Positions 9,971 through 63,025 of a stretch of DNA of 64,000 nucleotides are shown here, one piece after another. The position numbers and the translations under genes are program-made. The stretch covers positions 180,294-244,293 of IMG/VR virus record IMGVR_UViG_3300045921_000730; one strand, given 5' to 3'. Below the pieces are notes generated by a model. That model saw only the letters and a list, made by a program, of their open reading frames with translations. It was not told the DNA's origin and did no database searches. Numbering within the stretch: the stretch's first letter is position 1; every line of letters begins with the position of its first letter.

Positions 9971-12900
9971 ATGAGACGACGTTTATTAAGTAGTCAACAA
10001 ACAGCTCCAGCACAACAACCTAATATTTTGTATACATGGGGTGGAAATAACAATGGTCAACTAGGTGATGGAACAACTGTGAGCAAATCAACACCACAAC
10101 AAATCGGGACCGAAAGTTGGAATATTGTTTCTGGTGGATCCAGTCATACATTAGCTATTCGTAATGACGGAAAATTATTTACGTGGGGTAGCAATACAGA
10201 AGGACAACTTGGTATACAATTTTTATATGCAAACGGAAGCAATTTTGGTTTGATTGGTTCAGGCATTGAAGAATTAGAAAACGTAAAAACATGGAATACA
10301 ATTTCTTCTTCATGTGAGGGTCTAACCATGGCTGGAATAGACAATGCCGGTCGCTTGTTTGTATGGGGAAGAAACAATTGGGGACAATTTGGTCAAGGGA
10401 ATCTAGAAACAGATTCAATTGGTGCCGAATGTGTGCTGCTTCCTGTAAACAATCAGTCGTGGATATCTATATCAGCCAATCGAGTACTCACTGGAACATC
10501 AACACGTCGTTTCTTTGCAGCCATTCGTAACGACGGAAGTTTGTTTGTTTGGGGTGCAAACAACCAAGGACAACTTGGCCTCGGAGACACATTAGATAGA
10601 TCTCTTCCGACCCAAGTCGGTACATCAAGTTGGACCATGGTGTCTTGTGGAAGTGAACATACTTGCGCTATTCGTAGTGACGGTGCATTGTTTGCATGGG
10701 GCTTCAATAATGCAGGTCAACTCGGTGACGGAACAACTACAAACAGATCATCGCCGGTTCAAATTGGAACATCAAGCTGGACTATGGTGTCATGCGGAGG
10801 CGCAGATGGTTTTACACATGCTATCACAAACGATGGTCGATTGTTTGCGTGGGGCGTCGGGTTGTTTGGAGTGCTTGGTGATAATACAATAAATAACAAA
10901 TCTTCACCCGTTCAGATCGGTACATCAAGCTGGACTATGGTATCTTGTGGTGTTTTACATGTAGGAGCAATACGTAGCGACGGTCTTCTATTTATGTGGG
11001 GCCAAAACCTCTTCGGTGAAGTTGGTGATGGAGCACTTACTAACAGATCTTCACCTGTTCAAATTGGAACATCAAGCTGGACCGTGGTGTCTTGTGGTGA
11101 AAGAGCTACAGCTGCTATTCGTTCTGACAATAGTTTATTTGCCTGGGGAAGAAATAACAACGGCCAACTCGGTGACGGAACAACCACAAACAGATCGTCG
11201 CCGGTTCAAATTGGAACATCAAGCTGGATAGCAGTATCGTGCGGTTCAAGCTTTGTGGCCGCCATTAGAAGTGATAATAAACTATTTACGTGGGGAAGTA
11301 ATGATGCGGGTCAGCTAGCTGATCCAACAAGCATCAACCGATCGTCTCCTGTTCAAGTTGGAACATCAAACTGGATATCCGTTAGTGCAGGAAACCAAAT
11401 GTTTGGAGCAATTGATACCAATGGTAAATTATTTACTGTTGGAAACAATTCACATTTTAATCTTGGAAGAATAACATACACAAATTCACCAGTTCAAGTT
11501 GGAACTTCGAGCTGGAATGCTGTTTCTGTTGGTGAAAGACACGTTCTCGGACTTAGAAGCAACAACAGTTTATTTGTCTGGGGAGGTAACAATTTTGGTC
11601 AACTTGGTGACACAAGCACACAAACGAGATTTTCGCCCGTTTCCCTGGGCGGAACTTGGTTGTCTATAAGTGCAGGTCAATTACACAGTGCAGCAATTCG
11701 TAATGACAATATTTTATTTACGTGGGGAAATAACTCAGAAGGACAACTTGGTGACGGAACAACCACAAACAAATCGTCGCCAGTTCAAATTGGAACATCA
11801 AGCTGGACAACTGTGAGTGCCGGTAGTTCTCACACAGCTGCCATACGTGTCAATGGTAGTCTATTTACATGGGGAACAGGAACGTTGGGAGTTCTAGGCA
11901 ATAATTCAACAACGCCTCAATCATCTCCAGTCCAAATTGGCTCTTCGAGCTGGACAGCTGTAAGTGCAGGAGCTTTACACACTCTTGCTATTCGTTTGGG
12001 TGGTTCCCTTTTTGCGTGGGGGTTCAATTCTCAGGGAGAACTCGGTGACGGAACACTTGTTAGTAAATCCTCGCCAGTACAGATTGGTTCTTCAAGCTGG
12101 ACAGCTGTAAGTGCAGGACAATCGCATTCGGTTGCTATACGCTCCGACAATCAATTATTCACCTGGGGCCAAGGTTTTGCAGGGCAGCTTGGTACTCCCG
12201 GTAACAGATCTTCACCTGTTCAAATCGGTGCTGTTGCAACGGGAGTATCCGCCGGAAACAGAAATTCAGTATTTTGGAACGCTGCTGGCGGTCACACGAC
12301 AGGAAATGCCTATCCAACTGAAACCGTGACAGCACTTACACCGTTTGTACTAGGAAGAACAATTTATAATTTTGGTCAAAATGTAAGCGTTCCAGTCCAA
12401 ATTGGCTCTTCGAGCTGGATAGCAGTATCAGGGGGAGAACAACATTCAGTAGCTATTCGTGCTGATGGTGCATTGTTTACATGGGGAAACAATGCTTTCG
12501 GACAATTAGGAAACGGCAATGCCACCACCGTTCGCTCACCAATTCAAATTGGAACATCAAGTTGGACCGCAGTAAGCGTTGGCGGTTCACACACTATGGC
12601 TATAAGATCTGATGGATTATTGTTTGCGTGGGGTGCAAACGATTGGGGACAGCTTGGCGACGGAACAACTTCACCCAAATCATCTCCAGTCCAAATTGGT
12701 TCTTCAAGTTGGTTATTTGTTGATGGTGGAAGTAACTTTACACACGCTATTCGGTCGGATAACTTATTGTTCGGCTGGGGCAACAACAATTTTGCTCAAC
12801 TTGGTGATGGAACATTTACTAGTAGAAGCTCACCGGTCCAAATTGGTTCTTCCAGTTGGGTGGCTGTTTCCTCAGGTGCTTCACACGCTGCCGCTATTCG

Positions 12901-13963
12901 CAGTGACGGCGCTTTATTTACGTGGGGAAATAACAGCTCTGGTCAACTCGGCGACAACACAACAGCAACCAGATCATCACCCGTACAAATTGGCTCTCAA
13001 AGTTGGGTGGCTGTTTCAGCCGGCAATGTGTTTACACTTGGCTTACGTTCAAATTATATTCTGTTTGGTTGGGGCAACAACGGTTGGGGACAACTCGGCT
13101 CTGGAACGACATCAAATAGATCCTCGCCAACACAAATTGGAGCAACAAGCTGGCGTCAAATATCAACAGGCGCCACTCACTCAATGGGCATTAGATTAAA
13201 TCGTGTTAATTTGCCTCTTACAATTTCCTCGGACGTTGATAATTATAATCTCTATACGGCTGTTGCTTCTAATCCTCTTTATGCATCAGGATTAACAGAT
13301 GTAACTCTAACTATCAATTCAGGTGTAAACGTTAAAAGTGCAACAACAGGTACAGCATCGCTCCGAATTCCAGCACAATTTAATGCCAATGATACAATTA
13401 CAGTTATCAATAACGGCACAATTATTGGTAGAGGTGGTAACGGAGGCAATGGCGTGGACTCAGGTAATGGTACGCCTGGTAACAATGGTGGTACAGCACT
13501 ATTAGTTTCGAGACCGGTTACATTCACAAACAACGGTACAATTGCCGGCGGAGGAGGAGGCGGTGGTGGCGGAGGTGGTGCCACAAGAACTGGGCCTGGT
13601 GGGAACCCAAAATCGCCGTCGCCTGTAACAACAACTGTTGCTGGTGGCGGTGGCGGAGGCGGTGCTGGGGGTGGTGCCGGAGGATCAACAACATCTCCTG
13701 CCGTCGGAGGCACACCGGGTCCGTTGGCCGCTGGCGGTAGTGGTGGAGCTGGAGGAACAGGCACAAATCCAGCAGGTCCTGTACAAGGTGGTGCTGGCGG
13801 AGCAGGAGGCGGACAAGGAAATACTGGCTCAACGGGCGGCAATTCTGTCTCTAGTGCTGTACCCTACACCGGTGGTACTGGCGGTGCTGCAGGTGCCGCT
13901 GTTTCAGGTAATCCATTAATTACATGGCCAGCCTTTGGTACACGTTTGGGTCCAATAAGCTAA
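9971..13963 (+). CDS. RCC1/BLIP-II repeat protein (about 21 repeats) fused to a gp38-like glycine-rich adhesin domain
   Basis: Repeated LF.WG.N..GQLGDGTTTNRSSPVQIGTSSW units of ~50 aa. The C-terminal ~250 aa are polyglycine-rich and homologous to 19013..19990. Confidence 0.85.
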   Translation: MRRRLLSSQQTAPAQQPNILYTWGGNNNGQLGDGTTVSKSTPQQIGTESWNIVSGGSSHTLAIRNDGKLFTWGSNTEGQLGIQFLYANGSNFGLIGSGIEELENVKTWNTISSSCEGLTMAGIDNAGRLFVWGRNNWGQFGQGNLETDSIGAECVLLPVNNQSWISISANRVLTGTSTRRFFAAIRNDGSLFVWGANNQGQLGLGDTLDRSLPTQVGTSSWTMVSCGSEHTCAIRSDGALFAWGFNNAGQLGDGTTTNRSSPVQIGTSSWTMVSCGGADGFTHAITNDGRLFAWGVGLFGVLGDNTINNKSSPVQIGTSSWTMVSCGVLHVGAIRSDGLLFMWGQNLFGEVGDGALTNRSSPVQIGTSSWTVVSCGERATAAIRSDNSLFAWGRNNNGQLGDGTTTNRSSPVQIGTSSWIAVSCGSSFVAAIRSDNKLFTWGSNDAGQLADPTSINRSSPVQVGTSNWISVSAGNQMFGAIDTNGKLFTVGNNSHFNLGRITYTNSPVQVGTSSWNAVSVGERHVLGLRSNNSLFVWGGNNFGQLGDTSTQTRFSPVSLGGTWLSISAGQLHSAAIRNDNILFTWGNNSEGQLGDGTTTNKSSPVQIGTSSWTTVSAGSSHTAAIRVNGSLFTWGTGTLGVLGNNSTTPQSSPVQIGSSSWTAVSAGALHTLAIRLGGSLFAWGFNSQGELGDGTLVSKSSPVQIGSSSWTAVSAGQSHSVAIRSDNQLFTWGQGFAGQLGTPGNRSSPVQIGAVATGVSAGNRNSVFWNAAGGHTTGNAYPTETVTALTPFVLGRTIYNFGQNVSVPVQIGSSSWIAVSGGEQHSVAIRADGALFTWGNNAFGQLGNGNATTVRSPIQIGTSSWTAVSVGGSHTMAIRSDGLLFAWGANDWGQLGDGTTSPKSSPVQIGSSSWLFVDGGSNFTHAIRSDNLLFGWGNNNFAQLGDGTFTSRSSPVQIGSSSWVAVSSGASHAAAIRSDGALFTWGNNSSGQLGDNTTATRSSPVQIGSQSWVAVSAGNVFTLGLRSNYILFGWGNNGWGQLGSGTTSNRSSPTQIGATSWRQISTGATHSMGIRLNRVNLPLTISSDVDNYNLYTAVASNPLYASGLTDVTLTINSGVNVKSATTGTASLRIPAQFNANDTITVINNGTIIGRGGNGGNGVDSGNGTPGNNGGTALLVSRPVTFTNNGTIAGGGGGGGGGGGATRTGPGGNPKSPSPVTTTVAGGGGGGGAGGGAGGSTTSPAVGGTPGPLAAGGSGGAGGTGTNPAGPVQGGAGGAGGGQGNTGSTGGNSVSSAVPYTGGTGGAAGAAVSGNPLITWPAFGTRLGPIS

Positions 13964-14082: not shown

Positions 14083-14463
14083 ATGAATACAATTACGATC
14101 AACATTATTGAATTCGATGAAAATAATAATAATATAATTGTTGGTTTTTCTCACGAAGAACTAACTAATGAAATTCGTCTTACATTTCAGATTTCTAATT
14201 TTGAAAAACCAAATGACATGGATCGTGTATTAAAAGAAATAGCTCACACAGGAATCTCTCTTGTTGAAGCAACAATAAAACAAGAACAATTAAAAAAACA
14301 ACAAGTATTAATCGAAAATTATAAAAATATTGTTGGTGTTAGAAAAACATATAATATCCCTGAACTTCAAAATTATATACAATTATTGTATTCTACCAAC
14401 GTTACCCCTGAAAACAACGCTGGTGATCCTTCATTTCAAGTCATCCCAGAAACTGACATGTAA
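14083..14463 (+). CDS. Hypothetical protein, paralog of 20048..20374
   Basis: Shares TIT..I...D......IV.F and VLK.IAH.GI...E...K.EQ.K with 20048. ATG 14083 is the likelier start; the ORF track starts at 14029. Confidence 0.6.
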   Translation: MNTITINIIEFDENNNNIIVGFSHEELTNEIRLTFQISNFEKPNDMDRVLKEIAHTGISLVEATIKQEQLKKQQVLIENYKNIVGVRKTYNIPELQNYIQLLYSTNVTPENNAGDPSFQVIPETDM

Positions 14464-14467
14464 TTGA

Positions 14468-14983
14468 TTATAAATTATTTTTAATGCAAAAGTCATATAC
14501 ATCTTGATACTTTATTGGTTTTTTAAATGACATTGATACCAAAAGACGCTCATTATTATAATTAATTACTTGATGACACTTTTCAGTATTGAATAACACA
14601 CAGTGGTTATCAGGATATATTAACTCAATAAATTTGTTTTTGAGCTTATATTGGCTAGTAAAATTTTCATTTTCATCAATAAACAAACACGACGATTTTG
14701 TATGTTGTAACAAAAAATTAATACAACAATCTCTATCAGCATCTCTGTGAAAGTGATAAACTTCGTATGGGTTCATTTTTACAAGAGTTGGAACATGCAT
14801 ATCAAAATTTTCATAAAACTTTTTTATAGCTTCGTTAGACACCATATCAAAAGGAAGGCCGATCACCGGAAAATCAAAACAATCGTACCATTTATCCGTT
14901 GACAAAGCTTTGATATATTCTAATAACTTATCTTTAAAATTACACGGTTGTTTTATTTGATAAAAATATTCATGCTGTTTCAT
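14468..14983 (-). CDS. 2OG-Fe(II) oxygenase/cupin-like protein
   Basis: HRD...H.V.N....R motif arrangement. Confidence 0.55.
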   Translation of the reverse strand: MKQHEYFYQIKQPCNFKDKLLEYIKALSTDKWYDCFDFPVIGLPFDMVSNEAIKKFYENFDMHVPTLVKMNPYEVYHFHRDADRDCCINFLLQHTKSSCLFIDENENFTSQYKLKNKFIELIYPDNHCVLFNTEKCHQVINYNNERLLVSMSFKKPIKYQDVYDFCIKNNL

Positions 14984-15002
14984 TTTTTGTTTCCTTTTTT
15001 AT

Positions 15003-15052
15003 CGAAAATTAGTTGAGAAAACCGCGAAGTATTTAGCTTTGTGGTAGTTCAT
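15003..15052 (+). mobile_element. Short single-hairpin IS200/IS605 derivative (PATE-like), copy E
   Basis: TTAT | CGAAAATTAGTTGAGAAAA-CCGCGAAG-TATTTAG-CTTTGTGG-TAGTTCAT. Confidence 0.7.
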
Positions 15053-15080
15053 ATAAAAAATTCCCCCCCCCCAATGTTAT

Positions 15081-15284
15081 AAATCGAGCTGAGAAAACCA
15101 CATGATTTTTAGTCGCGTGGATGAATCAGCACATTGGTATCTGGTTGGTTTGTCACCATAAATAGTAACGTCTGGTTGTGGGACGCAATCGGACATTAAA
15201 CAAAAACCGAAGGAGGCGTCGATGCTGTTAGGTCAAGTCGATGAATTCGGAAACCATGAAGTTTTTAGCTTCGTGGTAGTTCAT
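15081..15284 (+). mobile_element. Non-autonomous IS605 element carrying an orphan TnpB omegaRNA, copy A
   Basis: Starts after TTAT. Left-end hairpin, then ATAAATA (15158-15164), then from 15170 a scaffold homologous to the 3' end of tnpB 51512..52732; ends GGTAGTTCAT. Confidence 0.85.
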
Positions 15285-15340
15285 TCAAACAATAAAACGA
15301 ATTGAATAAGTATTCAAAGATAAATAAATAAATTGATTAT

Positions 15341-15390
15341 CGAAAATTAATTGAGAAAACCACGAAGTCTTTAGCTTCGTGGTAGTTCAT
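15341..15390 (+). mobile_element. Short single-hairpin IS200/IS605 derivative, copy F
   Basis: TTAT | CGAAAATTAATTGAGAAAA-CCACGAAG-TCTTTAG-CTTCGTGG-TAGTTCAT. Confidence 0.75.
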
Positions 15391-15424
15391 CCTGGTATAT
15401 ACCAAATTAAAAAGGAGACGCCAC

Positions 15425-18400
15425 ATGGCCACAAAAATTAGACTAAAACGAAGTGCTGTTCCCAATAATGTTCCCACGACAAGCCAACTTGACCTTGGTG
15501 AAATTGCTATCAACACTTATGATGGTAAACTTTATATTAAAAAAGACGATGGTTCTGAATCAATAGTGTTAGTTGGTCCACAAGCCGGTAACTCTGCTCC
15601 AACAAATCAAGTTGTTTATGGCACAGGGTTAAGTTTAACTAGTTCAGCAACGTTCACATATGATCCCACGACTGGAAATTTTACTGTTAATCCAGGAAGT
15701 GTAACTTCACCATCAAGCATTTCTTTGACTGCTGCAAGCGATTCGTCAATTGGTAACGGTGGCAGTATTGAATTGTTAGCTGGTAATGGTGGTTCAACAA
15801 GTGGTGATGGTGGTAACATTACTTTAAATGCGGGTGATGCTTCTATTGGCAACGGCGGCGATGTTTTTATTCTTGCTGGAACACCAACCAATGGTAATGG
15901 TGGTGATGTAACAATTACAGCGTCTGCTGGCTCCGGTTCTAACAACGAAGGTGGTGATGTAAATATCACATCCGGTAATTCTACAGGCTCTAGTGGTGCA
16001 GGAACAATTAATTTAACATCAGGATCCAACCCTGCAGGTACGGGCGTTGGAGGAAACATTGCTTTGACAGCCGGAGAAGGCGGTTCAGGCGGTGGCAATA
16101 TTACTTTAACAGCTGGCGACTCAAATAATTCGTCTGGCAATGCAGGCGACGTTAACATTATTGGCGGAAATGCTCTTCTTAACGGATCTGGAGGAAATGT
16201 TACATTTACAACTGGTGACTCTGCAACTGGTACAGCTGGCAATGCAATATTTAATATAGGTATTGGTAATGCAACACGCGGCACTTTTGATGTTGTACAT
16301 GGTAGCTCAAATAAATTTAGAGTAGCTGCCAACGGATATATCGGAATTAATCAAGACACACCAACAGAAGTTTTACATGTTGGTGGTAATATTAGATTAA
16401 CAGGAAGCATTAAATTTCCTGGCGGCGATATTACTGATAGTTCTCTCAATGGTCTGAGCGATGTAGTTATTTCTGGACCAACTAATGGTCAATTTTTGAA
16501 ATATAATGGAACAAACTGGGTAAATTCTGCTCTTGGTGTTGTTCTTGATGATATTAGTGATGTTGATATTGGTGTACCAACCAACGGTCAAGTGTTATAT
16601 AGATCAGGATCAAATTGGATTAATCAAACGCTTGTTATTGCTGACATTTCTGGTTTACAAACATCTCTTAATGGTAAGTTGAGCTTGTCTGGCGGCACAA
16701 TGACAGGTCCATTGATCCTTTCTGGTGCTCCTTCAGATCCAAACGAAGCAACTACAAAAACATATGTTGATAATGCTGACGCTGCTAAAGTCAACAAAGC
16801 TGGTGACTCAATGACAGGCCTTCTAACGTTGAGCGGAGATCCAACGGCACCGTTGCATGCAGCTACAAAACAATACGTCGACAATCTTGCAGGAGGGCTA
16901 GTACCACATGCAAGTGTAAAAGCAGCTACAACAGTAAACTTGTCATCTTTGTCAGGATTGTTGACGGTTGACGGATACACTCTATCTGCTGGTGATAGAG
17001 TATTAGTAAAAAACCAAACCACCGGAAGTGAAAATGGTATATATGTTGCTAGTGCCGGAAGTTGGTCTCGAGCAACTGACTTCGATGGAACACCTTCGGG
17101 TGAAGTTTCTCCGGGCGATTTTGTCTTTGTTGAAAATGGTACAACTAACGGTGGAACATCTTGGATTCTAATAACACCAAATCCAATTAACGTCGGAACT
17201 ACAACATTAACATTTACACAATTTAGTGGCGGTGCCGGCAGTAATCCTGGTGGTCTTGATACACAGGTCCAATTTAATGACGGCGGAACATTCGGTGGCG
17301 ATGCGGACTTTACATGGAATAAGACAACAAATACTTTGACAGCAACAAACATAACAACGTCTGGCACATTAGATGTAACACGTTATGTTGAAACAGGACC
17401 GATTGTTTCGATTTCGTCGGGGACATTAACCATCGATTTAGCGACCGGTACATTGTTTGAAGTAAGCTTAAATCAAAACATTTCAACTTTAACAATAAAC
17501 AACGCTGCTTCTTCAGGCAAGGTGTCGACATTTAGTTTAATGTTTGTTGGTGATGGTACTCCAAGAACGATCACGTGGCCAGCAAGCGTAAAGTGGCCAA
17601 ACGATGTTCCACCTACTTTATCCGCATCTAACGGAGCTGTTGACGTGTTCACGTTCTTTACACGTAATGGTGGTACAACTTGGTATGGTATTATTGCTGG
17701 ACAATTGTTCAATGACTCACAACCCATTGCTCCACCTGACTTAAGACTTGATCAAATATTGGCTGCTCAAAATCCAAACACAATAGACAATGGAAACAAC
17801 ACTCAAACGTGGAGATGGTCGCTTGGTGGTAGTAATAATGGTTTATCAATTAGAGAACATGCTGTATCCACATCTACTGGAACCTTATTCTCGATAGATT
17901 CATTAGCATCATCGACAGTTGGTATTTTTAATGCGCGTGCCCAAAACGGTCAAGGCGGTATTACAATTGATAATAACGGTTTTGTAACCGTCAATAGTGG
18001 TACAACAAACCCAACATTCACAATTGCAACTACGTCAGGATTTATAACAAATAGTCAGTTAAGATTTACTTCATCAGCACCATCACCACAAGTTACAACA
18101 GCAACGGGTACTAACTTAACAATTAATCCTGGCAATGCCACAGTTACGGGCACTGGACCATCATTAACATTACAGTCTGGTAACGGCTTAACAACTGGAG
18201 CAGGTGGTGCAATAAACATTACAGCAGGAAACGGTACAGGCACAAACCAAAATGGTGGTACCGTAACAATTAGTGGTGGTATACCAACAGGTACAGGCAC
18301 AAGTGAAATTCTTTTACGTACAAATAATACGACTCGTTTAACTGTTAACACCAGCGGTACAATTATTATTCCTGGAAATATGACCGTTGGTACAATCACT

Positions 18401-19009
18401 TCCGGCACTTGGAATGGTACAGCTGTTGGTACAGGATTTGGTGGTACTGGTTTAACATCTATTGGTTCAGCCAACCAAATACTTGGTGTTAATACAGGTG
18501 GCAGTGCTCTTGAATATAAAACTGTTACAGCTGGTACAGGTGTGATTGTAACACCATCAGCAAATACTATTACAATTAGTTTACCACAAGCAGTTAATAC
18601 AACGTCTAATGTTGAGATTGGGTCTTTGGGTGTTGGAACACCAGCTAGTGGTACTGCAGGTGAAATAAGAGCAACAAATAACATTACAGCTTATTACTCG
18701 TCGGATAAACGTCTGAAGGAAAACATTCAACCAATAGATAATGCTCTTCAAAAAGTTGGTAAAATTTCAGGTGTGATGTTTGACTGGAGCGATGACTATA
18801 TTCAAAAACATGGTGGTGAAGACGGTTATTTCATTCGTAAGCATGATGTTGGTGTTATTGCTCAAGAAGTTGAAGAAATTATGCCTGAAATTGTTGCCAC
18901 AAGAGAGGATGGCTATAAAGCATTGCGATATGAGCGTTTGGTACCGCTCCTAATAGAAGCAATAAAAGAATTAAAAGCAGAAATTGATCAATTAAAGAAA
19001 GGTAAGTAA
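15425..19009 (+). CDS. Long tail fibre with C-terminal intramolecular chaperone (peptidase S74-like)
   Basis: Mtd-N-like start. Ends YYSSDKRLKENI...LVPLLIEAIKELKAEIDQLK, the classic autocleaving chaperone signature. Confidence 0.85.
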   Translation: MATKIRLKRSAVPNNVPTTSQLDLGEIAINTYDGKLYIKKDDGSESIVLVGPQAGNSAPTNQVVYGTGLSLTSSATFTYDPTTGNFTVNPGSVTSPSSISLTAASDSSIGNGGSIELLAGNGGSTSGDGGNITLNAGDASIGNGGDVFILAGTPTNGNGGDVTITASAGSGSNNEGGDVNITSGNSTGSSGAGTINLTSGSNPAGTGVGGNIALTAGEGGSGGGNITLTAGDSNNSSGNAGDVNIIGGNALLNGSGGNVTFTTGDSATGTAGNAIFNIGIGNATRGTFDVVHGSSNKFRVAANGYIGINQDTPTEVLHVGGNIRLTGSIKFPGGDITDSSLNGLSDVVISGPTNGQFLKYNGTNWVNSALGVVLDDISDVDIGVPTNGQVLYRSGSNWINQTLVIADISGLQTSLNGKLSLSGGTMTGPLILSGAPSDPNEATTKTYVDNADAAKVNKAGDSMTGLLTLSGDPTAPLHAATKQYVDNLAGGLVPHASVKAATTVNLSSLSGLLTVDGYTLSAGDRVLVKNQTTGSENGIYVASAGSWSRATDFDGTPSGEVSPGDFVFVENGTTNGGTSWILITPNPINVGTTTLTFTQFSGGAGSNPGGLDTQVQFNDGGTFGGDADFTWNKTTNTLTATNITTSGTLDVTRYVETGPIVSISSGTLTIDLATGTLFEVSLNQNISTLTINNAASSGKVSTFSLMFVGDGTPRTITWPASVKWPNDVPPTLSASNGAVDVFTFFTRNGGTTWYGIIAGQLFNDSQPIAPPDLRLDQILAAQNPNTIDNGNNTQTWRWSLGGSNNGLSIREHAVSTSTGTLFSIDSLASSTVGIFNARAQNGQGGITIDNNGFVTVNSGTTNPTFTIATTSGFITNSQLRFTSSAPSPQVTTATGTNLTINPGNATVTGTGPSLTLQSGNGLTTGAGGAINITAGNGTGTNQNGGTVTISGGIPTGTGTSEILLRTNNTTRLTVNTSGTIIIPGNMTVGTITSGTWNGTAVGTGFGGTGLTSIGSANQILGVNTGGSALEYKTVTAGTGVIVTPSANTITISLPQAVNTTSNVEIGSLGVGTPASGTAGEIRATNNITAYYSSDKRLKENIQPIDNALQKVGKISGVMFDWSDDYIQKHGGEDGYFIRKHDVGVIAQEVEEIMPEIVATREDGYKALRYERLVPLLIEAIKELKAEIDQLKKGK

Positions 19010-20990: not shown

Positions 20991-21589
20991 TATACCAAGT
21001 TCCTTACAAAAATACATTTGGAAAAGACCAATATGCATATTGGGAAAATTTTCTTACAGACGAAGAAATAAATCAAATATTAGCTTTGCCTCAATGGCAT
21101 CAAATGACTGAAGGTCGTATAGGTGGTGCCTCCGAAGTTAATGATCTTAATAAAGAAGTTCGTAGTTCGTCAATTTCTTGGTTTTTACCTACAGCAGAAA
21201 CAAATCACATATGGAAAAAAATGACAGAAATAATATCGGAAGTAAATAGTCGTTTTTTTCAATTTGAAATCACAGGTTGTTATGAACCTGCGCAGCTTGG
21301 CTTATATAAAGCAGAGAGTGAAGATAAGTATGAATGGCATACAGACGCCATTCCTCAAGACAGAGCAGTGCCAAGAAAACTATCAATGGCATTGATGCTT
21401 TCTGATCCTTCAGAATTTGAAGGCGGAGATTTACAGATTAAAACAAACTCTGATCAAGCAATTACTTTAGAACAAAAACGTGGAAGAGCGTGGTTTTTCC
21501 CTTCGTACACTTTACATCGTGTAACACCTGTAACTAAAGGCGTTAGACGTTCTTTGGTTTTGTGGGTTGGAGGCCCTCAATTTAGATGA
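20987..21589 (+). CDS. 2OG-Fe(II) oxygenase, prolyl-4-hydroxylase-like
   Basis: WHTD...RKLS...FEGG.L...FPSY.LHRVTPVTKG.R.SLV.W. ATG 20987 overlaps the upstream stop (ATGA). Confidence 0.85.
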   Translation: MIYQVPYKNTFGKDQYAYWENFLTDEEINQILALPQWHQMTEGRIGGASEVNDLNKEVRSSSISWFLPTAETNHIWKKMTEIISEVNSRFFQFEITGCYEPAQLGLYKAESEDKYEWHTDAIPQDRAVPRKLSMALMLSDPSEFEGGDLQIKTNSDQAITLEQKRGRAWFFPSYTLHRVTPVTKGVRRSLVLWVGGPQFR

Positions 21590-21603
21590 TTTAACCCAAA
21601 ATC

Positions 21604-21728
21604 TATATAGGCTAAGAGCTGGCTGAATTTACGCCTACGGAGTGGCTGATGTTAATGCCACAACGAAGCAGGAATCAAGGTTGCCGTTGGGTGACTCCAC
21701 TTCTTTTTAAGAACACGTGGTGGTTAAG
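21604..21728 (+). ncRNA. Orphan, partly decayed omegaRNA/right end of the second TnpB family, copy G
   Basis: Gap-free match to 54641..54765 with about 19 mismatches in 125 nt (hand count); right-end hairpin damaged. Confidence 0.75.
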
Positions 21729-21740
21729 ATAATAATTTAT

Positions 21741-21944
21741 AAATCGAGCTGAGAAAATCCCACGATTTTTAGTCACGTGGATGAATCAGCACATTGGTAT
21801 CTGGTTCGTTTGTCACCATAAATAGTAATGTCTGGTTGTGGGACGCAATCGGACGTTAAACAAAAACCGAAGGAGGCGTCGATGCTGTTAGGTCGAGTCG
21901 ATGAGTTCGGAAACCATAAAGTTTTTAGCTTCGTGGTAGTTCAT
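21741..21944 (+). mobile_element. Non-autonomous IS605 element with orphan omegaRNA, copy B
   Basis: Near-identical to copy A; TTAT at 21737-21740, ATAAATA at 21818-21824, ends GGTAGTTCAT. Confidence 0.85.
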
Positions 21945-21982: not shown

Positions 21983-23899
21983 ATGTCTTTAAACAAACGA
22001 AAAAAACACACACCATTACAACCTGATAGTTTACAAAACGCTTTGTTTAGTTGGGGCGACAATAGCGTCGGTCAGCTAGGTACCAACAATTTAGTTAGTA
22101 CTTCATCGCCCGTAAACGTAAACACAGGTACAAGTTGGCAAACGATTTCTGTCGGTAGCTCTCATGCTGCTGCTATTCGTTCTGACGGTGCATTGTTTAC
22201 ATGGGGGAGAAATAATAACGGACAGCTGGGTCTTGGGGATACAATAGATCGTTCAAACCCGACACAAGTTGGTTCTTCGCTTTGGACAGCAGTATCTGCT
22301 GGTGGTAACCATACTCTTGCTATAAGAATTGATGGTCGTTTGTTTGCGTGGGGTCTTAACACTTCAGGTCAACTCGGTGACGGAACGTTAGTTAGCAAAT
22401 CATCCCCCGTGGGAATAGGAACTTCAAGTTGGGCATTTGTAAGTGCTGGCGAAAATCATTCTTTGGGTGGTAGATGGAGCCCTACCGACACAACAAACAT
22501 TGTTCGTATTGATGCGTGGGGACAAAATAATTTTGGACAGCTTGGTCTTGGTGACACAATAACCAGATCAACTCCCGTAGCTTTTGGTACAACAAACTGG
22601 AAAGAAGTTGTAGCAGGAGATTTTCATTCTGTGGGCATACGTACAGATATGACACTATCTGTGTGGGGAAGAAATGATCAGGGCCAACTTGGGTTAAATG
22701 ATACAATTAATAGATCTGCTCCAACAACACTAGGGACAAAGGAATGGTTAAATGTTAGTGCTGGCGTTTCTCGCACCACAGCTATCGATACTGAAAGAAG
22801 ATTATTCGCCTGGGGGACCAATACAGGCGACGGAACAACAATAAACAGATCATCTCCAGTCCAAATTGGTACATCGAGTTGGACGGTAACTAACACTGGA
22901 AATGTTACTCTAGCAATAGATATCAACAACAAATTATTTTCATGGGGAGAAAATTCTTCAGGACAGGGCGGCGACAATACGACAGTAAACAAATCTTCTC
23001 CAGTACAAGTTGGAACATATAATTGGAAATCAATATCAGCAGCAAGAAACAATTTTAGTTTAGGAATACGTGGCGACACAGATCCTGAATATCCATTGAA
23101 AGCAGAATTTGAAGAAGGTGATTCAGCAGTTATTCCTACTGCTCAAGCGTTCAATACGGCACTAAGATTTTTAACAATTTACAATCCATCAAAAACAAAA
23201 ACAATACAGTTGGGTGCCACCGGTGGGGCTCAAGCTTTCAACAGAGGACAAGCGGGTACGTTGTATGGCATGCCGATACGTCCACCAGGATTTACACCAA
23301 CAAACCCAACATTACTTTCAGTTCCGGCTGTAGGATGGAGAACGTTCCCTTCACAAGAACCTGTATTATTAGCTCCTCAAGAAACAAAAAAAGTAATGAT
23401 TGGCTTTAACGGAGGAAATACTGTAACCACCGGGGAAGACTATTTTGCTGTTGCATCAAGAGTCATCGGTTCAAATATATTTCGAATAACAAGAATTCGT
23501 GTTACTGCATCAAGCGTTCAAGGAATTGGATTCAATAATAACGAATACCCAATAGCCGGACAAGCAACGATAAACAATTTCAACAATTTGACTTTGTCTT
23601 CTTTGCCATCAGGAGCTTCTATTATAACACCACTTCCAAATTCTCAAGGATTAATTTTTGCGTGTACACGATTAGAAGGCGAGGGATTTCAAATACGGCC
23701 CGGTCCATGTAGCGAGGCTACATATGATTGGAGTTCAGGTGGTTTTTATGATGTGTTCAATGAAAATATAGTCACAAGTATTTGTTCTACTATACAAGTT
23801 CGTGTGGTCTCAAGTAGTCCAGGTATAAAAGTTGGCATTCTTCGATTGGGATGTAGTGATCCGTATTTTTATATTCAATTTACAGCAAACATTAGTTAA
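21983..23899 (+). CDS. RCC1-repeat protein (about 7 repeats) with an unrecognised C-terminal domain
   Basis: LF.WG.N..GQLG repeats in the first ~365 aa. Confidence 0.8.
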   Translation: MSLNKRKKHTPLQPDSLQNALFSWGDNSVGQLGTNNLVSTSSPVNVNTGTSWQTISVGSSHAAAIRSDGALFTWGRNNNGQLGLGDTIDRSNPTQVGSSLWTAVSAGGNHTLAIRIDGRLFAWGLNTSGQLGDGTLVSKSSPVGIGTSSWAFVSAGENHSLGGRWSPTDTTNIVRIDAWGQNNFGQLGLGDTITRSTPVAFGTTNWKEVVAGDFHSVGIRTDMTLSVWGRNDQGQLGLNDTINRSAPTTLGTKEWLNVSAGVSRTTAIDTERRLFAWGTNTGDGTTINRSSPVQIGTSSWTVTNTGNVTLAIDINNKLFSWGENSSGQGGDNTTVNKSSPVQVGTYNWKSISAARNNFSLGIRGDTDPEYPLKAEFEEGDSAVIPTAQAFNTALRFLTIYNPSKTKTIQLGATGGAQAFNRGQAGTLYGMPIRPPGFTPTNPTLLSVPAVGWRTFPSQEPVLLAPQETKKVMIGFNGGNTVTTGEDYFAVASRVIGSNIFRITRIRVTASSVQGIGFNNNEYPIAGQATINNFNNLTLSSLPSGASIITPLPNSQGLIFACTRLEGEGFQIRPGPCSEATYDWSSGGFYDVFNENIVTSICSTIQVRVVSSSPGIKVGILRLGCSDPYFYIQFTANIS

Positions 23900-24069: not shown

Positions 24070-25011
24070 ATGAATAAACAAACTTTAGCTGCTCTCCGTT
24101 CTGCTTTTTCAAAAGATTCCGAACAAAAAAACCCCTCATCAAATAATTATTATCCTTTCTGGAATATGAAAGATGGTGAAAAATGTGTAATTCGTTTCTT
24201 GCCAGATAAGAACGATGAAAACCCTTATGGTTTTTTGGTCGAAAAGTCTGTCCACACACTTGAAATCAACGGCGAACAAAAAACTGTCCCGTGTTTAACA
24301 ATGTATGGTGAAGACTGTCCAATCTGCAAACTTTCGCAAAAATATTATAAAGCCAAGGATGAGATTAATGGTAAGAAATATTGGAGAAAGAAGCAGCATA
24401 TAGCTCAAGCACTAATTGTTGAAGATCCACTACCTCCAAACGATGCTGGTGAAACGCACGAAGGTAAAGTTCGCTTCATTACTCTTGGTTTCCAACTCTA
24501 CGAAATCATTCAACACGCTTTCAAATCTGATGATGTTCTTGATTCTATTCCTTATGATTTCGAAGAGGGATATGATTTTATTATTAAAAAGTCAAAGCAA
24601 GGAAACTATTCGACCTATGCTGTTGGTTCAAGGTTTGCACGTAAACAACGCCCTCTAACAGAAGAGCAGCTTGCTGTTGCTGAAGCAGATATGGTTGATC
24701 TTTCTACCCTTCTTCCAAAGAACCCAGGGTTCGAAAAAGTGAATAGCATGCTTGAGGCCTCACTTGTTGGTGCAAATTATTCTGACGACGAAGATGAAGA
24801 AGAGTTCGTTCCAACCAAGCCACAAAGACAAACTTCTAAGCCAACAACAAAAGTTGTAGACAATAAAGATGATGAAGATGATGAAGAATTTCAAACACCA
24901 AAAGTAGTTTCTTCTAAAAAGCCAAAAAACGAAGAACCTGAAGACGAAGAAAGTGATGATATGGATGTAGAACAAATCCTTGAATCGCTTCGTAACAACC
25001 GTCGCAGGTAA
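24070..25011 (+). CDS. Single-stranded DNA-binding protein, T4 gp32-like
   Basis: IRFLP, CL..YGEDCPIC zinc motif, GYDF.IK, acidic C-terminal tail; upstream of uvsX. Confidence 0.85.
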   Translation: MNKQTLAALRSAFSKDSEQKNPSSNNYYPFWNMKDGEKCVIRFLPDKNDENPYGFLVEKSVHTLEINGEQKTVPCLTMYGEDCPICKLSQKYYKAKDEINGKKYWRKKQHIAQALIVEDPLPPNDAGETHEGKVRFITLGFQLYEIIQHAFKSDDVLDSIPYDFEEGYDFIIKKSKQGNYSTYAVGSRFARKQRPLTEEQLAVAEADMVDLSTLLPKNPGFEKVNSMLEASLVGANYSDDEDEEEFVPTKPQRQTSKPTTKVVDNKDDEDDEEFQTPKVVSSKKPKNEEPEDEESDDMDVEQILESLRNNRRR

Positions 25012-51506: not shown

Positions 51507-52822
51507 ATGAACTACCGCGTAGCTAAAGACAACGCGGTTTCCGAACTCAACGACCCAGCCAACTTCACCGGCGCCTCCTTCGGTTTTTGTTTAGAGTCCG
51601 ACTGCGTTCCACAACCAGACATTAAATTCAAACCTTGACGAAGTGTGTTCTTAGCTGCATTGACATCTCTGTCATGTACTTCACCACAAACAGGGCATGT
51701 CCATTCTCTAATGGAAAGATTCATGTCTTGTATGATGTGGTTGCACGAAGAACAAGTCTTACTAGATGGAAACCATCTATCTATTTGAATTACTTGTCTA
51801 CCATGCCATGCTGCTTTGTACTTCAACATCGAAACTAAACTACCCCAGCTAACATCAGATATTGCTTGTGCTAGTTTGTGATTTTTAATCATGTTCTTAA
51901 CACTAAAGTCTTCCAAACAGATTACTTGGTTATCGTTAATCAATTTGGTCGTTACCTGATGAAGATAGTTGTTTCTTTGATCTACTACTTTTTGGTGTTG
52001 TCTTGCTAGTCTGTACCTAGCTTTTGTTCTTGATTTTGTGTCTTTCTTTTTCTTAGAGAGTTGACGTTGGAGGTACTTGATCTTCTTTAGATGCTTCTTG
52101 AGAAATCGTTCGTTCTTAATCTCTGTTCCATTTGAATCGACAAGAAGAGATTTGATTCCAAGGTCAACGCCGATGATTTCACCTGTGGATTCCTTTTGGT
52201 CGATCTCAAACTCACCCTGAATGGAGGCAAAATACTTACCTGAAGCATTCATTGAAATTGTTACAGAATTCGCTTTCACTAATCGACCAGTGAATTTGCC
52301 TTTGAACTTGAATGGAACTTTGAACTTAGGAATCTTTAGGGTTTTTGCATCCCAGTCAATGACGAAATGTTGAGGTACCTTAAATAATTGTCTGCTATTG
52401 TGTTTAGATTTGAACTTTGGGAATTTGGCAATTTTACGGAAGAAGCGATCATATGCTCCATCTAAATCTTTTAGTGCTGCTTGAATTGTCTGAGAATTGA
52501 TTTCCTTTAACCATTCAAATTCAGGATTTTTCTTCATCTCAGTGACTAGAGCAGAGCAAGCATTGTATCCGATCGACTTTTTGTTTTCTAGGTATTCGTT
52601 CTTACGGATCTCAAGAAACTTGTTGAAGACGAATCGACGAGCGCCAAAATGCTTAGCCAAGAGTTCTTTGTCAGACTCTCTTGGATAAATTTGAACTTTG
52701 ACGGACTTCTGAACTATCACTTGATTTAGCATCCTAGATTGTGTTATACTATTATTTATACACAAAATCTCCAAAATATAAGAAATTTTACAAAAAATTT
52801 TTCTATTGAAATGGAATTGGCT
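51507..52822 (-). mobile_element. IS200/IS605-family tnpB-only element 1
   Basis: Right end ...CGCGG-TAGTTCAT at 51507. The left end is placed after the minus-strand TTAT at 52823-52826 (inferred; its hairpin is not recognisable). Confidence 0.7.
51512..52732 (-). CDS. tnpB: RNA-guided endonuclease TnpB, family 1 (406 aa from ATG 52732)
   Basis: HTH start; RuvC GVDLG / LED / HDRDVNAA all intact; CSSC...CPVC zinc finger; omegaRNA overlaps the 3' end. Confidence 0.95.
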   Translation of the reverse strand: MLNQVIVQKSVKVQIYPRESDKELLAKHFGARRFVFNKFLEIRKNEYLENKKSIGYNACSALVTEMKKNPEFEWLKEINSQTIQAALKDLDGAYDRFFRKIAKFPKFKSKHNSRQLFKVPQHFVIDWDAKTLKIPKFKVPFKFKGKFTGRLVKANSVTISMNASGKYFASIQGEFEIDQKESTGEIIGVDLGIKSLLVDSNGTEIKNERFLKKHLKKIKYLQRQLSKKKKDTKSRTKARYRLARQHQKVVDQRNNYLHQVTTKLINDNQVICLEDFSVKNMIKNHKLAQAISDVSWGSLVSMLKYKAAWHGRQVIQIDRWFPSSKTCSSCNHIIQDMNLSIREWTCPVCGEVHDRDVNAAKNTLRQGLNLMSGCGTQSDSKQKPKEAPVKLAGSLSSETALSLATR

Positions 52823-52837
52823 ATAAGCAAAAATTAT

Positions 52838-53013
52838 CAGAATTGGGGCTGAGAAAACCACGTGATCATCAGCGATGAATCAGCCATAAATAATTTACAG
52901 TCTGGTTGTAGAACGCAGTCGGACACTAAACAAAAACCGAAGGAGGCGCTGGTGTTGTTAGCTGGGTCGATGAGTTCAGAAACCGCGTTGTCTTTAGCTA
53001 CGCGGTAGTTCAT
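52838..53013 (+). mobile_element. Non-autonomous IS605 element with orphan omegaRNA, copy C
   Basis: TTAT at 52834-52837, left hairpin, ATAAATA at 52886-52892, scaffold from 52900, ends GGTAGTTCAT. Confidence 0.85.
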
Positions 53014-53175: not shown

Positions 53176-53247
53176 GGGCTGGTAGTGATAATGAGAGCAC
53201 GTCGCGTTTGCACCGCGAAGGTGGGAGTTTGATTCTCCTCCGGTCCA
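53176..53247 (+). tRNA. tRNA-Ala(UGC)
   Basis: GGGCTGG/CCGGTCC acceptor with G3:U70, anticodon arm TCGCG-TTTGCAC-CGCGA, T arm GGGAG-TTTGATT-CTCCT; CCA not encoded (CAA follows). Confidence 0.9.
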
Positions 53248-62820: not shown

Positions 62821-63025
62821 ATGAACTACCGCGTAGCTAAAGACGACGCGGTTTCCGAACTCATCGACCCAGCTAACATCACCGGCGCCTCCTTCGGTTT
62901 TTGTTTAGAGTCCGACTGCGTTCCACAACCAGACATTTTATTTATGACTACAAATTAATTAGATATCAATAGGCCGATTCATCCATGTGATTGAAGATCA
63001 CGTGGTTTTCTCAGCCCTGAAGATG
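62821..63025 (-). mobile_element. Non-autonomous IS605 element with orphan omegaRNA, copy D
   Basis: Minus-strand TTAT at 63026-63029, left hairpin, ATAAATA at 62939-62945; scaffold differs from that of tnpB element 1 at about 5 positions in ~117 nt. Confidence 0.88.

What the first reader, a model, noticed from the sequence alone, without database searches (positions are those of the whole stretch)
15003..15390. Three IS605-derived mini-elements stacked in one 390-bp divergent promoter region
Two 50-bp single-hairpin elements (E, F) flank a 204-bp omegaRNA cassette (A), all in the same orientation and all after TTAT. A C10 homopolymer (15063-15072) lies between E and A. F sits between the late-promoter motif and the RBS of the 1194-aa fibre gene, so its hairpin would be in that mRNA leader. 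E and F appear to fuse the left-end 5' segment to the right-end hairpin, so one hairpin would serve both ends, which is a very minimal mobile unit.
Basis: partly seen in the sequence, partly recalled or inferred. Interest (0 to 1): 0.6.

Follow-up and report, generated by a model that had tools for sequence, protein, structure and literature searches.

The report
Stacked IS605 mini-elements in phage promoter
A 441-bp gap between two divergent genes of a hot-spring jumbo phage holds three gene-less derivatives of IS200/IS605 transposons: one guide-RNA (omegaRNA) cassette flanked by two 50-bp elements that keep only a single transposase hairpin, an unusually small form that also occurs in multiple copies in an unrelated bacterial genome.

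Summary
E (15003-15052), A (15079-15284) and F (15341-15390) lie in one orientation. Each follows TTAT and ends in GGTAGTTCAT. C10 is at 15063-15072.

A is one of at least 11 copies of a ~200-bp non-autonomous IS605 element in this 244-kb phage record. It carries the omegaRNA scaffold of an ISDra2-like TnpB encoded elsewhere in the window. This family has been mobile recently: a variant strain has a copy at a TTAT site that is precisely empty in this genome.

E and F are left-end/right-end fusions. F's 30-nt core is identical to the left end of bacterial IS605 elements that carry tnpA and tnpB, and its 3' tail is the right-end tail. The same architecture occurs at three unrelated TTAT sites in a Bacillota MAG that also holds the parent ends and intact tnpA. 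It also occurs in one metagenome contig.

No empty-site allele of E, A or F was found, and all three are present in two variant strains. No tnpA was found in about 254 kb of phage sequence, so movement of E/F as 50-nt units remains inferred.

F lies between a strongly gene-upstream-enriched ATAAATA motif and the fibre gene's ribosome-binding site. No terminator-like site was found.

Verdict: a real feature and a new variant of a known kind.

The parts
14468..14983 (-). 171-aa gene of unknown function; its start codon lies 16 nt from the TTAT that precedes E
   Evidence: no Pfam match, and no homologue outside this phage lineage.
14999..15002 (+). TTAT target/TAM preceding E
15003..15052 (+). 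Element E, a 50-nt single-hairpin left-end/right-end fusion. It consists of an 18-nt left-end linker ending GAGAAA, a hairpin at 15021-15045 (9-bp stem with two G.T pairs, loop TATTTAG) and the right-end tail AGTTCAT.
   Evidence: E is 100% identical in the strain-variant contigs L033, L034 and L035.
15063..15072 (+). C10 homopolymer in the ancestral spacer between E and A. Its length differs between strains: C10, C9 and CAC5.
15075..15078 (+). TTAT target/TAM preceding A
15079..15284 (+). Element A, a 206-bp omegaRNA-bearing non-autonomous IS605 element (PATE/MITE). It has an imperfect left-end hairpin at 15096-15118 followed by ATGAATC, an internal ATAAATA at 15158-15164, the omegaRNA scaffold at about 15170-15284, and a right-end hairpin at 15253-15277 followed by AGTTCAT.
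15285..15300 (+). Predicted guide portion of A's omegaRNA, i.e. the flank 3' of the right end. Its target would be TTAT plus this sequence in an allele lacking A.
   Evidence: Inference from the ISDra2/TnpB rule. One search shows no other TTAT+guide site in the genome.
15320..15330 (+). Two overlapping ATAAATA motifs (late-promoter-like). One ATAA unit is missing in the variant strains.
15337..15340 (+). TTAT target/TAM preceding F
15341..15390 (+). Element F, a 50-nt single-hairpin fusion with a perfect 9-bp hairpin at 15359-15383 (loop TCTTTAG) and tail AGTTCAT. Its 30-nt core is identical to left ends of bacterial IS605 elements.
15412..15427 (+). AAGGAG ribosome-binding site and ATG of the fibre gene
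15425..19009 (+). 1194-aa tail-fibre-like gene with a C-terminal Peptidase_S74 chaperone domain
21741..21944 (+). Closest sister copy of A (95% identical), after TTAT and 38 nt upstream of a 638-aa gene
51507..52735 (-). tnpB gene (51512-52735) whose 3' end and right end carry the same omegaRNA scaffold as the mini-elements. It is ISDra2-like and all three RuvC residues are present.
52838..53013 (+). Another omegaRNA mini-element of the family, after TTAT
62821..63025 (-). Another omegaRNA mini-element of the family, after TTAT

Best explanation
The intergenic region holds three non-autonomous derivatives of IS200/IS605-family (IS605-type) insertion sequences. Each was inserted 3' of TTAT on the same strand by the single-strand peel-and-paste chemistry of a Y1 TnpA supplied in trans. 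No tnpA is present in the phage sequence examined.

**A.** A is a left end, a short spacer carrying a phage ATAAATA promoter-like motif, and the omegaRNA scaffold and right end. It is a guide-RNA-only cassette. With one of the phage's TnpB nucleases it would cut TTAT plus flank in alleles that lack it, giving retention and homing. This step is inferred.

**E and F.** These are 50-nt fusions: the left-end linker (18-19 nt, ending in the AAAA guide) and hairpin are joined directly to the right-end tail (TAGTTCAT). They most likely arose by deletion between the near-identical left and right hairpins of a parent element. One such unit was then copied to a second TTAT site nearby. A single hairpin thus carries both cleavage sites at the canonical distances. 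The architecture is shown; movement as a 50-nt unit is inferred.

**F's side effect.** F lies between the fibre gene's ATAAATA motif and its ribosome-binding site, so its hairpin is predicted to sit near the 5' end of that late mRNA. This too is inferred.
For: **Ends and target**
- All 14 left ends examined follow TTAT, and all right ends finish in TTCAT or TTTAT.

**Family mobility (shown)**
- Variant-strain contigs L176 and L177 carry a left end directly after a TTAT. L033 carries the matching right-end junction.
- This genome has the precise empty site with no duplication.

**A is an omegaRNA cassette**
- A translates to the TnpB C-terminus and aligns with the tnpB-linked copy.
- The consensus structure has 31 pairs, 7 with compensatory changes. 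The fold z-score is -4.4.
- TnpB matches ISDra2 TnpB (8H1J, 5e-69) with the D, E and D residues present.

**E/F architecture**
- F's 30-nt core is identical to left ends in about 40 bacterial and metagenomic loci, including L028 with Y1 tnpA plus tnpB. Those left ends continue ATGAATC, whereas E and F continue TAGTTCAT, the right-end tail.
- The same fusion lies at three unrelated TTAT sites in Bacillota MAG G001, plus one decayed copy. G001 also has the parent left end with the identical linker (L159), the parent right end (L155) and four intact tnpA genes.
- The fusion is also present in contig L027, whose linker equals the left end in L023.
- E/F similarity ends exactly at the canonical boundaries.
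- E's two stem substitutions keep pairing on the top strand only.
- The linker length matches the 19 nt that is critical in IS608 (PMC3597680).

**Promoter motif**
- 85 of 127 ATAAATA motifs lie in the 10% of the genome that is intergenic, peaking 20-40 nt upstream of start codons.
- The motif-to-ATG distance at the fibre gene is 94 nt, or 44 nt without F.
Against: - No empty-site allele of E, A or F was found. All three are present in two variant strains that are 93-97% identical to this genome, and E is invariant in them.
- No Y1 or serine tnpA was found in 244 kb plus 10 kb of a longer contig.
- The known TnpA transpososome synapses two hairpins (PMC3597680). A one-hairpin substrate has no demonstrated pathway.
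- Within this genome, right ends with GGAAACC go with TTCAT and right ends with GAAAACC go with TTTAT. E and F combine GAAAACC with TTCAT, which may make right-end cleavage poor.
- No parent element with the E/F linker was found anywhere.
- The multiple copies in G001 could also come from recurrent deletion in situ.
- There are no RNA data. Transcription starts, omegaRNA expression and the leader position of F are predictions.
Confidence: 0.7

Rival explanations
1. E and F are immobile relics. Two larger elements of one subfamily inserted at the two TTAT sites, and each later lost its interior by slippage or recombination between its left and right hairpins. The 50-nt units never moved as such.
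For: In the bacterial parents the left and right hairpins are near-identical direct repeats (L159 against L155), so such deletions should recur. Free-standing IS605 stem-loops are known as relics in Borrelia plasmids (PMC2775950). The known transpososome needs two hairpins (PMC3597680). E and F are fixed in all strains seen.
Against: This needs two insertions of a parent that is now absent from the genome, into one 135-bp region, followed by two identical deletions. E and F share a linker found in no other element. The phage's own mini-elements have dissimilar left and right hairpins, so they are poor substrates for such a deletion.
Confidence: 0.25
2. E and F act as the left and right ends of one composite 388-bp element (15003-15390) that carries A. 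The two hairpins a TnpA dimer needs would be supplied by two single-hairpin units.
For: The span starts right after TTAT and ends in TTCAT. E and F are co-oriented and bracket A. Three elements in 135 bp of ancestral spacer is far from random.
Against: There is only one such arrangement in the genome and none elsewhere. The spacers between E, A and F resemble ordinary intergenic DNA, with a promoter motif and a strain-variable C tract. The single-hairpin units in G001 stand alone.
Confidence: 0.08
3. Whatever their origin, E and F are now kept for expression control. F would be a 5' stem-loop in the fibre mRNA leader, affecting stability or translation. E would supply a promoter-like CTAAATACT on the minus strand, 45 nt upstream of the 171-aa gene.
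For: F's hairpin dominates the predicted leader fold. CTAAATA is the only one-mismatch variant of ATAAATA that is enriched to a comparable degree upstream of genes (4 observed against 0.4 expected). E's loop differs from the canonical TCTTTAG at exactly the base that creates this variant. E is invariant across strains although the adjacent spacer varies.
Against: Counts for CTAAATA are tiny and include E itself. Zero changes in 50 nt at 3-7% divergence is weak evidence of constraint. F's hairpin does not cover the ribosome-binding site. There are no expression data.
Confidence: 0.2
4. The hairpins are ordinary intrinsic terminators or chance palindromes unrelated to transposons.
For: On the minus strand F's stem is followed by TTTCTC.
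Against: The terminator scan finds no site in 14400-15600. No T-run follows either hairpin on the + strand. E does not fold on the minus strand. The 30-nt identity to IS605 left ends and the TTAT/TTCAT boundaries cannot be chance.
Confidence: 0.02

Closest known systems
PATEs/MITEs of the IS200/IS605 family (palindrome-associated transposable elements), including omegaRNA-bearing PATEs that TnpB uses in trans (Meers et al., bioRxiv 10.1101/2023.03.14.532601; PMC7290912)
   Same: A and its roughly 11 sister copies are gene-less. They keep a left-end hairpin, the last part of tnpB with the omegaRNA, and the right end. They insert 3' of a fixed tetranucleotide without duplication and depend on TnpA and TnpB supplied in trans.
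   Different: These elements sit in a lytic-type jumbo phage with 7-8 tnpB genes. They carry a phage promoter-like ATAAATA just upstream of the omegaRNA scaffold, which the tnpB-linked copies lack. E and F go further and keep only one hairpin, with no omegaRNA scaffold.
IS608 / ISDra2 (model IS200/IS605 elements; PMC3597680, PMC5027513, PMC8612924)
   Same: Both have top-strand subterminal hairpins and a left cleavage site about 19 nt 5' of the hairpin foot. A 4-nt guide lies 5' of the foot (IS608 AAAG with TTAC; here AAAA with TTAT), and the right cleavage site is a few nt 3' of the hairpin. The TnpB is 5e-69 to ISDra2 TnpB.
   Different: No tnpA is present. The target is TTAT rather than TTAC or TTGAT. 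E and F have one hairpin where the characterised transpososome binds two.
REP elements and their RAYT/TnpA-REP transposases (PMC3333891, PMC8266576, PMC3733652)
   Same: Both are short single hairpins related to IS200/IS605 ends, dispersed in intergenic DNA and thought to be moved by a Y1 enzyme in trans.
   Different: E and F lack the GTAG/CGTC tag. No RAYT gene is present and the copy number is very low. Unlike REPs, E and F retain a complete IS left-end linker and right-end tail with the IS target and end motifs.
Free-standing IS605 stem-loops in Borrelia plasmids (Delihas 2009, PMC2775950)
   Same: Both are isolated IS605-type stem-loops next to genes, away from any transposase gene, sometimes conserved with G.U-compatible changes.
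   Different: The Borrelia loops were described as dispersed remnants of either the left or the right end. E and F, and the G001 and L027 copies, are precise left/right fusions bounded by TTAT and TTCAT/TTCAC at several unrelated sites.

Membership tests
IS200/IS605-family non-autonomous element (PATE/MITE) | Insertion 3' of a fixed tetranucleotide, in one orientation relative to it, with no target-site duplication and no terminal inverted repeats | tested here: met
   TTAT precedes E, A, F and all 11 other left ends. The filled-against-empty site comparison shows no duplication.
IS200/IS605-family non-autonomous element (PATE/MITE) | Two subterminal hairpins (left end and right end) on the same strand | tested here: not met
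   This is met for A (15096-15118 and 15253-15277). It is not met for E and F, which have one hairpin each. E and F are therefore a variant rather than standard members.
IS200/IS605-family non-autonomous element (PATE/MITE) | Ends homologous to those of elements that encode tnpA and/or tnpB | tested here: met
   A's right end equals that of the tnpB copy at 51507-52735. F's core is identical to the left end of L028, which encodes Y1 tnpA (1.4e-31) and tnpB.
IS200/IS605-family non-autonomous element (PATE/MITE) | Mobilisation by a Y1 TnpA | not testable with these tools
   No PF01797 or PF00239 hit in the 244-kb record, and none among the called genes of a further 10 kb. About 34 kb of the longer contig was not examined. 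Activity needs an experiment.
omegaRNA of TnpB (OMEGA system) | Derived from the 3' end of tnpB plus the right end, with the guide taken from the flank 3' of the right end | tested here: met
   A translates to TnpB residues of about 371-392. Alignment A1 places A with the tnpB-linked copies L012 and L020.
omegaRNA of TnpB (OMEGA system) | Conserved secondary structure supported by covariation | tested here: met
   31 consensus pairs, 7 with compensatory double changes, in 16 sequences. The MFE z-score is -4.4. There is no Rfam match, so the family is not a curated one.
omegaRNA of TnpB (OMEGA system) | Cognate TnpB with an intact RuvC catalytic triad | tested here: met
   The alignment printed (to the top PDB hit, a designed TnpB-like nuclease, 9YYG) shows GVDLG, CLEDF and HDRDVNAA; ISDra2 TnpB (8H1J, 8BF8) matches over the same residues 7-370 at 5e-69. 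Pfam finds the OrfB_IS605 and TNB domains.
omegaRNA of TnpB (OMEGA system) | Expression, and RNA-guided cleavage of TAM plus target | not testable with these tools
   No RNA runs hold this sequence. Only the promoter-like motif upstream of the scaffold is seen.
REP / RAYT system | GTAG or CGTC tag at the hairpin foot, high copy number, and an associated TnpA-REP gene | tested here: not met
   No such tag in E or F, two copies only, and no Y1 gene.
Intrinsic terminator | GC-rich stem followed by a T-run | tested here: not met
   No terminator-like site in 14400-15600 on either strand.
T4-type late promoter (TATAAATA class) | A/T-rich octamer enriched at a fixed short distance upstream of late genes | tested here: inconclusive
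   ATAAATA is about 17-fold enriched 15-50 nt upstream of start codons. However, no transcription data exist and the cognate sigma factor was not sought.

The most novel reading that the evidence does not exclude
This jumbo phage may run a distributed RNA-guided homing system. Seven or eight late-promoter-driven TnpB nucleases would be combined with a dozen gene-less omegaRNA cassettes. Each cassette would be transcribed from its own phage promoter and aimed at the empty allele of its own site in co-infecting relatives.

Alongside it, 50-nt single-hairpin elements such as E and F would be the smallest functional IS200/IS605 substrates. That would show that one hairpin can serve both the left and right ends for a Y1 transposase.
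Probability: 0.3. Interest if true: 0.8.

Novelty: new variant of a known kind. Interest (0 to 1): 0.58.

Why it matters
If single-hairpin fusions such as E and F can be moved by TnpA, they define the minimal cis requirements of single-strand peel-and-paste transposition: about 50 nt, one hairpin, one guide and two cleavage sites. They would also form a bridge between IS200/IS605 ends and REP-like repeats. That is directly testable with oligonucleotides and a purified TnpA.

The context matters too. Phage records rarely carry more than one tnpB: 374 of 50,697 records have one, at 510 places in total. This phage has 7-8, plus a dozen omegaRNA cassettes fitted with a phage promoter motif, and one shows an insertion polymorphism between strains. 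That makes the lineage a natural system for asking whether TnpB/omegaRNA works as a homing or competition device between phages, as protein homing endonucleases do in T4-like phages.

The insertions also sit in the control regions of tail-fibre genes, so they may affect expression of host-range determinants.

Tried and rejected
- **Rfam.** Gathering thresholds on the whole window and E-value mode on 14950-15450 gave only a tRNA and one chance-level hit.
- **Sigma-70 promoter and terminator scan.** Nothing in the intergenic region.
- **Phage collection.** No DNA match for the locus or for A.
- **Empty sites for E, A and F.**
  - The 171-aa neighbour has no homologue beyond its own 3-member cluster.
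  - Fibre relatives in viral contigs are 54% identical or less and are not syntenic.
  - The strain-variant contigs all contain E and A, and laid contigs span F in both variant strains.
- **Read laying.** It had only Logan contigs, so read-level C-tract heterogeneity, excision joints and circle junctions could not be assessed. The joint 15230>15357 is a cross-alignment of another copy, not an excision.
- **E/F-type elements elsewhere.**
  - None in viral contigs with two patterns.
  - The two hits in genome G003 turned out to be left ends of full elements with shared flanks, not mini-elements.
  - No orthologous empty sites for the G001 copies were found among 30 relatives.
- **The 288-kb sister contig.** It is not held for whole-record search. 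I walked 10 kb into its extra 44 kb and stopped, to stay within the 40-kb holding limit for a metagenome record.
- **Look-up of the short ORF next to the polymorphic site.** Not on record.
- **Regulatory off-target use of the guides.** No omegaRNA guide has another TTAT+target in the genome.
- **A guide/cleavage-site rule to predict E/F competence.** The within-genome covariation (GGAAACC with TTCAT, GAAAACC with TTTAT) has one exception. It also does not transfer to IS608's GAAT/TCAA or to G001, so I treat it as weak.

Full report
**What is there**

The window is the last 64 kb of a 244,293-bp IMG/VR virus record (G000, 35.6% G+C, CheckV 72%). It comes from hot-spring and microbial-mat metagenomes. 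This part of the genome is a tail-fibre module.

Between a 171-aa gene on the minus strand (14468-14983) and a 1194-aa fibre gene (15425-19009) lies a 441-bp gap.
- E at 15003-15052, A at 15079-15284 (206 bp) and F at 15341-15390, all on the + strand.
- Each follows TTAT and each ends in GGTAGTTCAT.
- C10 is at 15063-15072.

E and F are 46/50 identical, and their similarity stops exactly at TTAT| and at TTCAT|. The 20-nt right-end motif occurs 7 times in the window against 0 expected, and about 17 times in the genome. With the three elements removed the gap would be 135 bp. Three of 17 elements landing there has P about 1e-4.

**A is an omegaRNA mini-element of a family that is mobile in this phage**

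The genome has seven full-length tnpB genes, 35-43% identical to each other. An eighth lies in a 288-kb sister contig.

The genome also has at least 11 copies of a ~200-bp gene-less element. Each consists of:
- TTAT, then a left-end linker and an imperfect hairpin followed by ATGAATC;
- a short spacer;
- the last ~115 nt of a tnpB element, including the right-end hairpin and AGTTCAT.

Evidence that this is an omegaRNA cassette:
- A translates to the TnpB C-terminus.
- It aligns with the tnpB-linked copy at 51507-52735. The consensus structure of 16 copies has 31 pairs, 7 with compensatory changes.
- A's scaffold folds with z -4.4.
- The cognate TnpB matches ISDra2 TnpB (8H1J) at 5e-69 and keeps the RuvC D, E and D residues.
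- Rfam has no model for this RNA.

Evidence of recent mobility comes from a variant strain:
- Contigs L176 and L177 have a left end directly after a TTAT.
- Contig L033 from the same sample carries the matching right-end junction.
- This genome, and L174 and L175, read TTAT followed at once by the same flank, with no duplication.

**E and F are left-end/right-end fusions with one hairpin**

F's 30-nt core (linker end GAGAAAACC plus the hairpin) is identical to the left ends of many bacterial IS605 elements. These include L028, which encodes a Y1 TnpA (PF01797, 1.4e-31) and a TnpB. In those elements the hairpin is followed by ATGAATC. In E and F it is followed by TAGTTCAT, the right-end tail.

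E and F therefore keep:
- the target TTAT;
- the 18-19-nt left linker, the length known to be critical in IS608 (PMC3597680);
- the AAAA guide position, matching IS608's AAAG/TTAC logic (PMC5027513);
- one hairpin;
- the right cleavage motif.

The same architecture is not unique to this phage.
- Bacillota MAG G001 has three intact copies at unrelated TTAT sites and one decayed copy.
- G001 also has the parent left end with the identical 13-nt linker next to a tnpA fragment (L159), a parent right end with the same hairpin (L155) and four intact tnpA genes.
- Contig L027 has another copy, whose linker equals the left end in L023.

In those parents the left and right hairpins are near-identical direct repeats, which gives a simple origin by deletion between them. 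The phage's own mini-elements have dissimilar left and right hairpins. No element with the E/F linker exists elsewhere in the genome or in the collections scanned.

One formation event followed by one copy event is therefore more economical than two parallel insertions and two identical deletions. This step is inference.

E's two stem substitutions relative to F both give G.T pairs. Its hairpin therefore survives on the top strand (-5.8 kcal/mol) and not on the bottom strand (-0.8). That fits a top-strand DNA role, or a plus-strand RNA role.

**What argues for caution**

- E, A and F are all present in the two variant strains available, and E is invariant there. Only assembled contigs were available, so rare excision products cannot be seen.
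- No Y1 or serine transposase is present in 244 kb, or in a further 10 kb of the longer contig.
- The characterised TnpA dimer synapses two hairpins. How one hairpin would present both cleavage sites is unknown.
- Right ends in this genome pair GGAAACC with TTCAT and GAAAACC with TTTAT. E and F combine GAAAACC with TTCAT, which might weaken right-end cleavage. The rule has an exception and does not transfer to IS608, so I give it little weight.

**Relation to gene expression**

ATAAATA is the dominant upstream motif of this phage:
- 127 copies in the genome, 85 of them in the 10% that is intergenic;
- a sharp peak 20-40 nt before start codons;
- about 17-fold enrichment 15-50 nt upstream of start codons.

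Two overlapping copies lie at 15320-15330. The fibre ATG is 94 nt downstream, or 44 nt without F. No other copy lies between F and the ATG. F is therefore predicted to sit at the 5' end of the late fibre transcript, where its hairpin dominates the fold without covering the ribosome-binding site.

No terminator-like or sigma-70-like site is present. All seven tnpB genes have ATAAATA 25-35 nt upstream. All but one of the 14 mini-element copies aligned, though not the two tnpB-linked copies, have ATAAATA a few nt before the first omegaRNA stem. This suggests omegaRNA cassettes adapted to phage transcription.

**Comparison with what is known**

OmegaRNA-bearing PATEs used in trans are known (bioRxiv 10.1101/2023.03.14.532601), so A is a new member of that kind in an unusual host. 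Only 374 of 50,697 phage records carry a tnpB homologue, at 510 places in total.

For E and F the closest known things are PATEs, REPs and the free-standing IS605 stem-loops of Borrelia (PMC2775950). I found no description of precise left/right fusions bounded by the target and end motifs.

I therefore rate the finding a new variant of a known kind, with interest 0.58.

Read laying was given 4,501 letters. No alternative genetic code was used.

Noticed in passing
G000:C1 about 21513-21516 (minus strand; outside the window); loci L174-L177, L033: This is a strain polymorphism. A variant strain has an omegaRNA mini-element inserted after this TTAT, 11 nt upstream of a small ORF's ATG. This genome has the exact empty site. 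JGI contig L033 is a chimera assembled through the repeat.
   Followed up: yes
window 51512-52735 (-) and about 53566-54654 (+); five more tnpB genes elsewhere in G000; one more in L180 18280-19524: There are seven tnpB genes in 244 kb, plus an eighth in the longer contig. All have open frames and each has ATAAATA 25-35 nt upstream of the start. No tnpA was found. This is far more than the usual one per phage record.
   Followed up: partly
window 15158-15164, and the same position in sister copies (alignment A1): The mini-elements carry ATAAATA a few nt upstream of the first omegaRNA stem. The tnpB-linked copies have coding sequence there. This suggests the omegaRNA is driven by a phage promoter.
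   Followed up: partly
G000:C1 about 24116-24171 (+), 32650-32700 (-), 35990-36040 (-): This is a second family of about 47-nt single-hairpin units. Each has a left-end-like linker ending CAAAGAAA, a hairpin with loop TCTTTAG, and a right-end-like tail RRTTCAR. The boundaries are sharp and follow TTTA(C). One copy is followed by ATGAATC and then GTAGTTCAC.
   Followed up: partly
window 21600-21720: An omegaRNA/right-end remnant of a different tnpB lineage (the one at about 53566-54654) lies directly upstream of the A-type copy at 21741-21944. Stacking of elements therefore recurs upstream of another large structural-module gene.
   Followed up: partly
window 15063-15072 and 15320-15333: The C tract is C10 here, C9 in one variant strain and CAC5 in another. 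One ATAA unit of the promoter-like repeat is missing in both variants. Only assembled contigs were available, so within-population variation is unknown.
   Followed up: partly
window 15029-15037 (minus strand): E's loop differs from the canonical TCTTTAG by one base. On the minus strand it therefore reads CTAAATACT, 45 nt upstream of the 171-aa gene's ATG. CTAAATA is the only one-mismatch variant of the promoter motif that is enriched to a comparable degree upstream of genes (4 observed against 0.4 expected).
   Followed up: partly
G000:C1 40813, 55447, 73424 (right ends): Three right ends finish in TTTAT instead of TTCAT. This recreates TTAT next to their own guide sequence. If the TAM is TTAT they would be self-targets of their own omegaRNA.
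   Followed up: no
G000:C1 73291-73424 (+): A roughly 125-nt two-hairpin element has a left end and a right end but no omegaRNA scaffold. It is intermediate in size between the 200-bp cassettes and the 50-nt units.
   Followed up: no
window 9971-13963 and 21983-23899: Very large RCC1-repeat proteins (1330 aa with 18 RCC1 repeats, and 638 aa) are encoded within the tail-fibre module.
   Followed up: no
window 53176-53247: A tRNA gene lies between an omegaRNA mini-element (52838-53013) and a tnpB gene. Another tRNA-like stretch lies next to the polymorphic insertion site near G000 21600.
   Followed up: no
L155 (G001:C38) and L026 1630-2000: Bacterial elements with this hairpin family carry a long conserved structured-looking segment upstream of the right end that differs from the phage's omegaRNA scaffold. 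It was not identified.
   Followed up: no
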